A stretch of 64,000 nt of DNA from positions 620,001 to 684,000 of the forward strand of contig CAJFCJ010000001.1 in the NCBI GenBank assembly GCA_904063045.1, written 5' to 3'. Origin of the DNA: Dimorphilus gyrociliatus. Taxonomy: Eukaryota > Animalia > Annelida. The position numbers and the translations under genes are program-made. The notes under the pieces were generated by a model. The model searched no databases, had not been told where the DNA came from, and worked only from the letters and a program-made list of their open reading frames with translations. Below, one piece after another: positions 26,401 to 29,400 of the stretch. Each line of letters begins with the position of its first letter. Positions within the stretch are counted from its first letter, which is position 1.

Positions 26401-29400
26401 AAAAAAATTACCCGTAATTTTCATCCAATAGTGTGGAAAGTTGGTAAACTGGTATGTATATAATAGAACCAAAACAATCATACTGTACACAATAACAATC
26501 CACCAAAAAACGAAGGATATTAATCTCCATAGTTTATAAGACATTTGGAACACAATTAGGAAAATCAGCAGAAGGAGCATATAGATGATTCTATAGACTA
26601 CCGCTTCCATAAGAGCCATTGCAAGTAGCATGCCACAGCATACTAAAATCCAATACTTGCACAGGAAGAGATGAAGCCAGGATCCTATTGGGATTTATTA
26701 TATACTTTATAAATTATTATCTATGAATGAAAGCTTAACTATTTATTATCAAATAACTAAAATAAAGCTTTGTCTATATTAAACTAATAAAACCTTTACT
26801 GTAATAAAACTATATTATAGATAAGAATTTCATGGCTAAATAATAATGATAATAATAATAGTAGAAATTAATGTACCAAAAACTTTTATCCACTTTGGTA
26901 AATTCTTTTGATCTTCTGTTTCGTCTTCGTCTAAAAGAAAATAGATTATACTAAAAAAAAAAACAAAACACCTTATCTATTGCATAAAAAAAAAAGAACG
27001 GAAGCGAATAATGAGCGGAACAAAAACAAGTTTTGAATATACACTAAAGTTACGGACTATATTTAATGATAAAACTTTGCGAAGCCAGTACATCGTCGAC
27101 AAAATATGATCTTATTTCTGATTTTCTCTTCTCGCATATTTCGAGAAGTTTAAAAGCTAATTGAAAGAAAAAAATATATGCTAATATTTTTCATAGGCCT
27201 AAACTAATGAATAAAAAAAATGATCGATTAAAAGACGTAACGTTAAAAAAGACGTACAGTAAAGATGCAGGCGGTGGAAAAATTTATTCTTTTAACAATA
27301 TTAGAATTAAATATAAAAAATAAACTATGGCTAGTTTAAACGATAATGAAAATATTATTATTGGAGAGAATTTTGATGATAAGGATTTTTTCGTAAGAAA
27401 ATGTTCTTTTAATAGAACAGGAAATTTAATATGGGTTGATGCTAATGGATGTTTACCATTTTTAGGTAATTAATTTTAAACATTAAAAGTAATTAATTAT
27501 AATATTATTTCAGCGTCGTTATGCGATAGTTCAGAACCAAAAATACATTTACTTTTGAAAAATTGTTATGCTTTCTCAACCCAATCAAAATTAGGTCAAA
27601 CTGAGACGACACATTCTATAAGGAACATTAATTGTTCCTTACCTAAAAATAAGTTATTTCATCGTTGGCTTTTATGTGAATTTTTCTATTCGGCAATAGA
27701 ATTAAGCTTGTTTTATGGACCAAGAAATGATATACAGCTTTTTCTTAAAGAGCTTAAATTAAATACAAAGTTATCTCGAAATCAATGGAGAATAGTTAGG
27801 AAACTGGTATGCGGGAAACCTAGACGTTTTTCTAGCTCATTTCTCAAGGTCGAAAGAACACTACTAAAAAATCAAAATTTTGCAACACGTTCGGCACAGC
27901 AAGAAAAAATAATATCCACAAAAAATCTCCCTATGTATATTCCTCAAGCCTACACGGCAAACTTTCAAGTTTTAGTCCGACTGAATAATAGGATTATTGA
28001 AGGACGTATCATTAAATGCGAAGTCGATGGATTTTATAAAGTGAGATGCGACGATTCAATAAACTTAGTACAAGATGGTGATCTAATGCCAGTCCAGCCG
28101 CTACTGATGATACCGCTGGCTGCTTTTTTTGAAAATCATTCAAGAAGTCTATTAAATCCGGGATTACTATCTGAAGCCGACAAATATGAAAGAGCGTTGT
28201 CATTAATTGAAAGAAATCTTCTCTTAGGAGCTAAACAATTGTTGATTAACAAAAAAATTAAATTGGCAGATATTCAACTCGAACGATATCTTACAATCTC
28301 TTTGGCTATTGGAATGGCAGCTTATGATGGAATGATATCGCCAGAAATGCGTAAGATTGTTATGGAAAGACTTGTGAATATACTTACACGGGCAACGAAT
28401 CCCGAGAATGTAAAATTAATTGAATTCGTAAGAAAAACAATTAAAGCACTCTTTTGAGTTAAATACATATTTATAATTAACGATTAAAATACTTACGCGC
28501 TCCATTTTCAACCAAACGCAGACTTAAATTTGCCAAAGCTTCAGCGTCATTTTTCATCTTCCTTTCATAAGACCATTGTCTCATAGTAAAGAAAAATCCG
28601 AGAGTGAACAACAATTTCACGGTCAATACAAAACATGATTTTTCCCCATATTTCACAAGCCCTAATTCAGATAACGGATAGCCATTAGTTGTGTTAACGG
28701 GAAGCTCTTCATTAGATAGTTGTAAGCCATAAATATACTGAAGTAGGACTAAACAAATGCCATAGAAAACAATAACTGGTGAGAGAGTGAGCAATAGTTT
28801 ACTTTTCTGGGGCGTCATCCAAATGATGCATGCCGCAAGTAACATGAGAAAAGAGAGCCAACTGTGATAAGTTATACTCCATGCTAACATAATAATTAAA
28901 GCGCTAAAATGACTATGACGCAACCAATATTTATACATAGCTTGCATAACATCTGTAAAAGCTGAACGAGATTTGATAGTGGTTTGTGTAGAAAGATTTG
29001 ATTGTTCGTTTGCTGATGGCTCTTCCACGAGATTTATTTGAACCTCTTCACCATCATCCCTTTCAGTTTGTAACGTAGCATTAGCTGACTCGTTAACTTC
29101 GTCCATTGAATTATATGTAAGACGAACGGTGTCATCTTCAATTAAGGCCTGTGCGGGAACAATTTATAATTAACGATGTTAAATATATAATGTATCAACA
29201 AAATAACAAAAAGAACGGAAGCTTAAAGGAAGTTGATAAAAATTCATAAATTCCAAAACCCTTTAGTCGAATAGGTTTCAAATGAAACACATGCGATAGA
29301 TACAAGTTGGACAACAGGTTGATTATCACTATACTTACGACCCTTGATGAGTTGTCTCTCATTATTGCCTGAAATTAGACCTTACAGTTTAGAGAAAGAA

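What the first reader, a model, noticed from the sequence alone, without database searches (positions are those of the whole stretch)
27327..28457. Divergent LIN-9/Aly-like MuvB subunit nested antisense inside Piezo
Seen: a two-exon gene fills the ~1.5-kb Piezo intron on the opposite strand, with a recognisable DIRP core (RW..CEFFYS, GKPRRFS..ER) and a Tudor-like segment. The C-terminal region, where LIN-9 binds LIN-52 and B-Myb, is short and divergent. Established: LIN-9 scaffolds DREAM/MMB, and Drosophila Aly is a fast-evolving testis paralog forming tMAC. Inference: an independently evolved germline-specific MuvB variant in a non-insect, perhaps retro-derived given its few introns.
Basis: partly seen in the sequence, partly recalled or inferred. 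Interest (0 to 1): 0.7.

Follow-up and report, generated by a model that had tools for sequence, protein, structure and literature searches.

The report
Truncated LIN-9 paralog nested in Piezo
A small, intact, fast-evolving extra copy of the cell-cycle scaffold gene LIN-9 sits backwards inside an intron of the Piezo channel gene of a miniature marine worm; it keeps the front half of LIN-9, has swapped the partner-binding tail for a new one, and is conserved in a related species, but when and where it is used is still unknown.

Summary
On the + strand, inside a 1,566-nt Piezo intron (26931-28496, - strand), lies a two-exon gene of 360 codons: exon 1 27327-27465, a 48-nt phase-1 intron, exon 2 27514-28457. 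Exon 2 matches Pfam DIRP (E 1.3e-15) and human LIN9 residues 94-301. Its model folds as DIRP helices plus a Tudor barrel like LIN9 in solved MuvB structures.

It is a paralog. The genome has a canonical multi-exon LIN-9 on another contig, with DIRP and LIN9_C. The nested gene has no LIN9_C. Instead it has about 100 residues of predicted helices with no detectable relative.

A related species carries the same gene in the same Piezo intron, with the same 139-nt exon 1 and intron phase. Between the two species the nested protein is 55% identical (dN 0.32, dN/dS about 0.15, synonymous sites saturated). Canonical LIN-9 is 94% identical (dN 0.035). So the gene is functional, evolves about nine times faster, and appears confined to this lineage.

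Germline specificity is untested. RNA-derived contigs cover the gene at low depth, but their strand is unknown and the small intron is retained. Retro-origin is plausible, not shown. Earlier scan notes name the genome Dimorphilus gyrociliatus; the scan had not noted this gene elsewhere.

The parts
27327..27465 (+). Exon 1 (ATG; 46 codons plus 1 base). No recognisable domain.
   Evidence: ORF, sequence. The relative has an exon 1 of the same 139-nt length with an ATG and the same donor (L003 5798-5936). Amino-acid identity is 43% with no gaps. There is no other copy in the genome.
27466..27513 (+). 48-nt GT..AG intron, phase 1. It holds an in-frame TAA if retained.
   Evidence: Sequence. The relative has a 65-nt intron at the same position and phase, with unrelated sequence. 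No spliced RNA was seen: the X1 contig 27440-27814 retains it.
27514..28457 (+). Exon 2 (313 full codons plus TGA stop).
   Evidence: Ortholog P0002 is 55% identical with one 1-residue indel.
27642..27944 (+). DIRP domain (exon-2 residues 43-143).
   Evidence: Pfam PF06584, E 1.3e-15. Human LIN9, E 6e-16. 27 of 38 columns that are at least 80% conserved in 125 DIRP proteins are retained. Model pLDDT is about 80.
27936..28115 (+). Tudor-like beta-barrel (residues 141-200).
   Evidence: AF2 strands with pLDDT above 90. Foldseek matches 7r1d_C and 7n40_B (LIN9) and PHF1 Tudor domains.
28131..28454 (+). C-terminal domain of about 108 residues with four predicted helices. It stands where LIN9_C stands in canonical LIN-9.
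   Evidence: No Pfam hit at E up to 10. hhalign probability 0.2%. No atlas hit. No other copy in the genome. 55% identical to the relative, as conserved as DIRP. Model pLDDT only 46-66.
28483..28488 (+). ATTAAA, a candidate poly(A) signal 26 nt after the stop and 8 nt before the Piezo exon.
   Evidence: Sequence. The relative has AATAAA at a similar distance after its stop. Function is inferred.
26931..28496 (-). Host Piezo intron (1,566 nt) that holds the whole coding region.
   Evidence: Joint 26930 to 28497 in an RNA-derived contig, CT..AC on the + strand.
28497..29147 (-). Upstream Piezo exon. Its last base lies 39 nt beyond the nested stop codon, so the nested 3' UTR must overlap it antisense.
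   Evidence: Contig pieces. Piezo_TM1-24, E 1.9e-46.
26876..26930 (-). Downstream 55-nt Piezo micro-exon.
   Evidence: Contig piece; sequence.
27071..27159 (.). Conserved non-coding block about 170-250 nt upstream of the nested ATG. It is a candidate promoter or 5' UTR element.
   Evidence: It is the only alignable intronic stretch outside the gene: 73% over 89 nt to L003 5495-5583. Function is not tested.

Best explanation
This is a functional, lineage-restricted, fast-evolving paralog of the MuvB scaffold LIN-9. The architecture is a new 46-residue N-terminal exon, a DIRP domain, a Tudor domain, and a new helical C-terminal domain of about 100 residues. The LIN9_C region is missing; in human LIN9 that region pairs with LIN52 and binds B-Myb (established knowledge, PDB 6C48). 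The canonical LIN-9 is kept elsewhere in the genome. The most likely working (inferred, not shown): the conserved DIRP-Tudor module still docks RBBP4/LIN-53 and LIN-37 as in PDB 7N40, while the replaced tail uncouples it from LIN-52/Myb and recruits something else. That would make a variant MuvB-like sub-complex or a competitor for shared subunits. It most likely arose as a retrocopy that landed antisense in the Piezo intron and picked up a 5' exon, at or before the common ancestor of this worm and the related species. Shown here: gene structure, domains, paralogy, conserved nesting, purifying selection and rate acceleration. Inferred: partners, origin and context of use.
For: DIRP, E 1.3e-15. 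Human LIN9 residues 94-301, E 6e-16. The model matches LIN9 in MuvB structures, 7r1d_C with TM 0.69. 27 of 38 family-conserved positions are kept. A second, canonical gene with DIRP at 112 bits and LIN9_C at 44 bits lies on C19. LIN9_C is absent from the nested gene and its ortholog. The ortholog sits in the same Piezo intron, with the same strand, exon-1 length and intron phase. Between the two species dN is 0.317 for the nested gene against 0.035 for canonical LIN-9 and 0.12-0.14 for Piezo. pS is about 0.7 for all three, and omega for the nested gene is about 0.15. Differences by codon position are 0.33/0.23/0.51. The frame is open in both species although the chance of that is about 1e-13. 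The three canonical introns in or beside the homologous region are absent, and the single intron is at another place and phase. RNA-derived contigs cover 27440-28526 and none of the rest of this or the neighbouring Piezo introns.
Against: No spliced transcript was seen. The only assembled RNA form retains the 48-nt intron and lacks most of exon 1, and its strand is unknown, so it could be a Piezo intron-retaining or intronically terminated form. The C-terminal model has low confidence. dS is saturated, so omega is only approximate. The tree cannot date the duplication: the pair sits on a long stem at the base of animal LIN-9s, and the AU test does not reject a recent duplication, p 0.27. No binding data exist. 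Only two species carry it, so constraint rests on one pairwise comparison.
Confidence: 0.75

Rival explanations
1. It is a full tMAC-type germline scaffold. On this view it is expressed in the male or female germline, and its tail is a LIN9_C diverged beyond recognition that still pairs with a LIN-52-like partner. It would work with the extra CXC (LIN-54/tesmin-type) genes as a second MuvB complex, parallel to Drosophila Aly/Tombola/Wuc.
For: Paralogy with a retained canonical gene and about ninefold faster protein evolution mirror Aly. The genome has three CXC-hinge-CXC loci, two of them compact single-exon genes with E about 1e-32 to the LIN54 DNA-binding domain. The tail is helical and as constrained as the core. 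Depth in a whole-animal RNA set is low, about 8 against 108-301 for Piezo, as a tissue-restricted gene would give.
Against: There are no expression data by sex or tissue. There is no LIN9_C signal by Pfam or profile-profile comparison. No LIN-52 gene or paralog could be detected, though that blank is uninformative. LIN-37 is single-copy. Extra tesmin-type CXC genes are widespread in animals (my own knowledge), so they need not be partners.
Confidence: 0.2
2. It is a non-functional or decaying retrocopy, or an over-read ORF, and the RNA signal is Piezo pre-mRNA.
For: The RNA contig retains the 48-nt intron, lacks exon 1 and is unstranded. No full-length protein for it turned up in the protein collections, where only a 174-aa fragment call appears.
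Against: A 355-360-codon frame is open in two species whose synonymous sites are saturated. There is one in-frame indel, a codon-position pattern of 3 > 1 > 2, and dN/dS of about 0.15. The ATG, exon-1 length, splice sites and phase are all conserved, while the surrounding intron is mostly unalignable. Other Piezo intron stretches have zero depth.
Confidence: 0.04
3. It is the organism's only LIN-9, that is, a divergent ortholog.
For: None after testing.
Against: A canonical gene with DIRP (E 9.6e-31) and LIN9_C lies at G000:C19:3097598-3098955. It is 94% identical to its ortholog in the relative.
Confidence: 0.01

Closest known systems
LIN-9 / human LIN9 (MuvB core subunit of DREAM and Myb-MuvB)
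   Same: The DIRP domain followed by a Tudor barrel aligns to human LIN9 residues 94-301, and the fold matches LIN9 in 7R1D and 7N40. Most family-invariant residues are kept.
   Different: It has 360 aa against 542. The LIN9_C domain (PF19438), the LIN52/B-Myb-binding region, is absent and replaced by an unrelated-looking helical domain of about 100 aa. The N-terminal exon is new. Protein evolution is about nine times faster than in the canonical copy of the same genome.
Drosophila Always early (Aly), the testis LIN-9 paralog of tMAC (PMC3123737)
   Same: It is a second LIN-9-family gene beside a canonical one, and it diverges fast. Extra CXC-type genes are also present in the genome.
   Different: The origin appears independent: it was found only in this annelid and one relative. 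Aly keeps the second, C-terminal conserved region (my recollection of the literature, not tested here), whereas this gene does not. Testis expression and complex membership are unknown here.
Canonical LIN-9 of the same genome (G000:C19, locus L001)
   Same: It has the same DIRP-Tudor core. The AU test does not reject it as the parent of the nested gene.
   Different: By my reading it has at least nine exons, including a phase-2 intron inside DIRP. It has LIN9_C and is 94% conserved against 55% between the two species. It lies on a different contig.
Nested, intron-poor retrogenes in host-gene introns
   Same: It is antisense in a host intron, lacks the parental introns, has gained a 5' exon, and lies at a different genomic place from the parent.
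   Different: No poly(A) relic or target-site duplication was looked for, and after this much divergence none is expected. The nesting itself is conserved between species.

Membership tests
LIN-9 / DIRP family (Pfam PF06584) | DIRP domain above the curated cut-off | tested here: met
   57.8 bits against a cut-off of 27, E 1.3e-15. 60.5 bits in the genome scan. The ortholog P0002 scores 68 bits.
LIN-9 / DIRP family (Pfam PF06584) | Tudor-type barrel directly after DIRP, as in the LIN9 structures 7N40 and 7R1D | tested here: met
   AF2 model pLDDT above 90 over residues 141-200. Foldseek 7r1d_C E 2e-8 over 176 columns, and PHF1 Tudor TM about 0.8.
Canonical LIN-9 (MuvB scaffold able to bind LIN-52 and Myb) | LIN9_C domain (PF19438), the coiled-coil region that pairs with LIN52 and binds B-Myb | tested here: not met
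   There is no hit at E up to 10 for the tail or for P0002, while the canonical gene of the same genome scores 44.2 bits and a fish LIN9 scores 394.6 bits. hhalign probability is 0.2%.
Canonical LIN-9 (MuvB scaffold able to bind LIN-52 and Myb) | Physical assembly with RBBP4/LIN-53, LIN-37, LIN-52 and LIN-54 | not testable with these tools
   No multimer prediction or binding assay was available. The only indirect support is retention of conserved core residues.
tMAC-type germline paralog (Aly-like) | Co-exists with a canonical LIN-9 in the same genome | tested here: met
   There are two DIRP loci, on C19 and C1.
tMAC-type germline paralog (Aly-like) | Germline- or testis-restricted expression | not testable with these tools
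One unsexed, unstranded contig set (X1) shows depth of about 8 over 27440-28526.
tMAC-type germline paralog (Aly-like) | Paralogous partner subunits (CXC/LIN-54-type, LIN-52-type) | tested here: inconclusive
   There are three CXC loci, two of them compact. LIN37 is single-copy. The LIN52 search was blank and uninformative. No link between these genes and the nested gene was shown.
Retrogene | Lacks the parental introns in the homologous region | tested here: met
   The canonical gene has introns 30 residues before the RW motif (phase 0), inside DIRP (phase 2), and after the Tudor region (my reading). The nested gene has none of them. Its only intron lies about 50 residues before RW, in phase 1.
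Retrogene | Poly(A) relic and target-site duplications | not tested
   These are not expected to survive at this divergence, and intron loss remains an alternative.

The most novel reading that the evidence does not exclude
Dinophilid annelids may have independently assembled a second MuvB-like transcription complex from compact, intron-nested paralogs. Its parts would be this LIN-9 variant with a new partner-binding tail and one or both of the compact CXC (LIN-54-type) genes. It would be used in a germline or sex-specific programme of an animal with extreme dwarf males, as a convergent counterpart of Drosophila tMAC.
Probability: 0.15. Interest if true: 0.7.

Novelty: new variant of a known kind. 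Interest (0 to 1): 0.45.

Why it matters
LIN-9 is a near-universal single-copy scaffold of the DREAM/Myb-MuvB cell-cycle machinery. The well-studied exception is Drosophila Aly, which founded a testis-specific complex. This gene is a second, independent case in a spiralian. It cleanly separates the RBBP4/LIN37-docking half (kept) from the LIN52/Myb-docking half (replaced). That gives a natural test of what the DIRP-Tudor module does on its own. It also bears on how conserved chromatin complexes spawn specialised variants. The organism is an emerging model with a compact genome and dwarf males, so the question can be answered at the bench. The gene also shows that a functional nested gene can be missed by routine calling: only a 174-aa fragment call was found in the protein collections.

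Tried and rejected
- **Word-indexed protein searches.** Searches with exon 2 and with the ortholog found no further relatives. Only the exhaustive HMMER search found P0002.
- **Spliced protein.** The joined exon 1 + exon 2 protein was not sent to any search or fold tool, because it has no reference. All searches were made exon by exon by reference. The two exons were joined once, inside a script, only to check frame and length.
- **LIN52 search.** The Pfam LIN52 search of the genome was blank, and the controls were blank too, so it is uninformative.
- **Protein atlas.** The feature search of the tail gave no usable hit.
- **Profile comparison.** Comparing the tail with LIN-9 profiles gave nothing.
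- **AU test.** The test on the 127-row tree did not finish in time. A 41-row careful tree replaced it. In the large quick tree the pair attached to the branch leading to plant and protist sequences with support 31. I read that as long-branch attraction.
- **Literature.** A search for other LIN9 duplications found nothing relevant beyond Drosophila.
- **Readings rejected.** Sole ortholog, pseudogene, and a tail that is merely decayed.

Full report
**What is in the sequence**

On the + strand an ATG-led ORF (27327-27473) is followed by a long open frame that ends at TGA 28455-28457. A GT at 27466 and an AG at 27512-27513 define a 48-nt intron. Exon 1 has 139 nt, so the intron is in phase 1 and the frame runs on at 27516. 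An in-script frame check gave 360 codons plus a stop.

I never sent the joined protein to a search or fold tool. Every search used exon 1 or exon 2 by reference.

**The host gene**

- The neighbouring - strand ORFs are Piezo_TM1-24 (E 1.9e-46 and 3.5e-61).
- Contigs of run X1 splice Piezo with GT..AG on the - strand at three introns, so X1 is RNA-derived.
- One of those joints runs from 26930 to 28497 and skips 1,566 nt.
- The nested coding region lies wholly inside that intron. Its stop codon ends 39 nt before the Piezo exon.

**What family it belongs to**

- Exon 2 matches Pfam DIRP at 57.8 bits (cut-off 27, E 1.3e-15).
- It matches human LIN9 (7r1d_C, E 6e-16), with exon-2 residues 20-218 aligned to LIN9 residues 94-301.
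- An AlphaFold2 model built on a 36-row alignment shows:
  - DIRP helices at residues 46-128, pLDDT about 80;
  - a beta-barrel at residues 141-200, pLDDT above 90;
  - four low-confidence helices at residues 220-312, pLDDT 46-66.
- Foldseek puts LIN9 from the two MuvB structures first (7r1d_C E 2e-8, TM 0.69; 7n40_B E 4e-6). PHF1 Tudor domains follow for the barrel.
- Of 38 alignment columns that are at least 80% conserved in 125 DIRP proteins, the window protein keeps 27 and its ortholog keeps 26.

**What it lacks**

- Pfam's LIN9_C (PF19438) is not detected in the tail or in the ortholog, even at E 10. A fish LIN9 scores 394.6 bits.
- A profile-profile comparison of the tail against 16 LIN-9 proteins gave probability 0.2%.
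- The protein-atlas feature search gave nothing.
- The genome has no second copy of the tail or of exon 1.
- Exon 1 has no significant Pfam match.

**It is a paralog**

A six-frame scan of the 77.9-Mb genome finds exactly two DIRP loci: this one at 60.5 bits and G000:C19:3098662-3098955 at 112 bits.

- By my reading of the sequence, the C19 gene has at least nine exons.
- One of its introns is a phase-2 intron inside DIRP.
- It carries LIN9_C above the cut-off (44.2 bits).

**It is conserved and constrained, but fast**

The exhaustive HMMER search of 1.84 billion representative proteins found one close relative, P0002 (309 aa, 55% identity, E 1e-97). Every other hit scored 62 bits or less and, with one weak exception (P0148, query residues 43-297), matched within residues 7-254, mainly the DIRP-Tudor part.

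P0002 lies on four contigs from runs SRR23372216, 28, 29 and 31.

- It sits on the opposite strand between the same Piezo_TM1-24 exons.
- That locus has an ATG-led exon 1 of the same 139 nt, a GT donor after the same codon, a 65-nt intron of unrelated sequence, and an AG acceptor that restores the same frame.
- The two loci are collinear at about 71% nucleotide identity. Inside the host intron, almost only the nested gene aligns.

The same sample (SRR23372229) also holds the canonical LIN-9 (P0151, L014). That allows a like-for-like rate comparison between the two species:

| Gene part | aa identity | dN | pS |
|---|---|---|---|
| Nested exon 2 | 55% | 0.317 | 0.705 |
| Canonical LIN-9 exon | 94% | 0.035 | 0.708 |
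| Piezo exons | 79-81% | 0.12-0.14 | 0.65-0.75 |

- Synonymous sites are saturated, so omega (about 0.15 for the nested gene, 0.016 for the canonical one) is approximate.
- dN is well below dS, and differences by codon position run 0.33/0.23/0.51.
- There is one in-frame indel in 308 aligned codons.
- An open frame of this length has a chance probability of about 1e-13.
- Together these show purifying selection on a protein that changes about nine times faster than its canonical paralog.
- The tail is as conserved (55%) as DIRP (59%) and Tudor (56%). It is therefore a working domain, not debris.

**When the duplication happened**

- In a 41-row careful tree the pair groups with animal LIN-9s (99/96).
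- It stands on a long stem (1.64) outside all canonical animal sequences, at a fork that is not starred (91/97).
- In a 127-row quick tree it attached, with support 31, to the branch leading to plant and protist sequences. That is typical of long-branch attraction.
- An AU test does not reject a clade of the nested pair with this lineage's canonical LIN-9 (p 0.27).
- No other ortholog appears in either protein collection.
- A duplication within this annelid lineage is therefore the simplest reading, but the date is unresolved.

**Origin**

The canonical gene has three introns in or beside the region homologous to exon 2:

- about 30 residues before the RW motif, phase 0;
- inside DIRP, phase 2;
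- after the Tudor region (my reading).

The nested gene has none of them. Its single intron lies about 50 residues before RW in phase 1. Together with the different contig, this fits retroposition followed by recruitment of a 5' exon. Stepwise intron loss is not excluded. The genome paper reports some intron loss and a median intron of 66 bp, so a 48-nt intron is unremarkable (PMC7854359).

**Expression**

Only one run could be found and laid.

- Two contigs (27440-27814 and 27793-28526, depth about 8.5) cover the gene. Piezo exons have depth 108-301.
- The rest of the host intron (26970-27431) and the other Piezo intron stretches in the bins have depth 0.
- That pattern favours a separate transcript over Piezo pre-mRNA.
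- Three caveats remain:
  - contigs carry no strand;
  - the contig retains the 48-nt intron and lacks most of exon 1;
- A productive mRNA, and any sex or tissue bias, therefore remain unshown.
- The published stage series covers embryos and females only (PMC7854359).

**How it most likely works**

From established structures, LIN9's DIRP-Tudor part holds RBAP48 and LIN37 (7N40), and its C-terminal coiled coil pairs with LIN52 and binds B-Myb (6C48, my knowledge). This protein keeps the first part and has replaced the second.

- The best-supported reading is a variant scaffold or competitor that engages RBBP4/LIN-37 but is uncoupled from LIN-52/Myb. Its new tail would bind something else.
- The tMAC-like, germline-specific version of this idea is possible but untested.
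- In its favour, the genome has three LIN54/tesmin-type CXC loci, two of them compact single-exon genes.
- An earlier scan note (s1-083342) says one CXC gene is also nested antisense in a host intron. I did not verify that nesting.

**Organism**

Earlier notes of this scan name the genome Dimorphilus gyrociliatus. The assembly size of 77.9 Mb fits the published 73.8 Mb. I did not verify the name independently. The relative is unnamed.

**Verdict**

- a fast-evolving paralog, apparently confined to this lineage: yes;
- germline-specific MuvB variant: untested;
- retro-origin: plausible.

It is a new variant of a known kind and of moderate interest.

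Noticed in passing
G000:C6:4004404-4004721 (L007 1069-2019, - strand) and G000:C2:2327388-2327702 (L008 880-1869, - strand); canonical-like copy at G000:C20:1456369-1456662: The genome has three LIN54/tesmin-type CXC-hinge-CXC loci. Two are compact ORFs of 316 and 329 aa in single exons. They are 54% identical to each other in the DNA-binding part, and each matches the human LIN54 DNA-binding domain (5FD3) at E about 1e-32. The C20 copy has a LIN54-like C-terminal helix. Scan note s1-083342 says one CXC gene is nested antisense in a BNIP2-family intron.
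   Followed up: partly
window 27071-27159: This 89-nt block in the host intron lies 170-250 nt upstream of the nested ATG and is 73% identical to the relative (L003 5495-5583), while the rest of the intron does not align. It contains a TTC-NN-GAA palindrome in both species. It may be a promoter or 5' UTR element of the nested gene.
   Followed up: no
window 28458-28526: The nested stop codon ends 39 nt before the Piezo exon, and a similar spacing is seen in the relative. Each species has a poly(A)-signal-like hexamer in that gap (ATTAAA here, AATAAA there). The nested 3' end must therefore overlap the Piezo exon antisense. The X1 contig runs at least 29 nt into the exon.
   Followed up: partly
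window 27440-27814 (X1 contig): The only assembled RNA form retains the 48-nt intron of the nested gene, which would stop translation after 48 residues. This could be regulated intron retention, a Piezo-strand RNA, or an assembly effect of low depth.
   Followed up: no
window 26876-26930, - strand: A 55-nt Piezo micro-exon is confirmed by the spliced contig. It bounds the host intron on its downstream side.
   Followed up: yes
G000:C167:23994-24275: A weak, below-cut-off LIN9_C-like match (17 bits, E 0.08) lies in a 619-aa open frame. It is probably a chance coiled-coil similarity.
   Followed up: no
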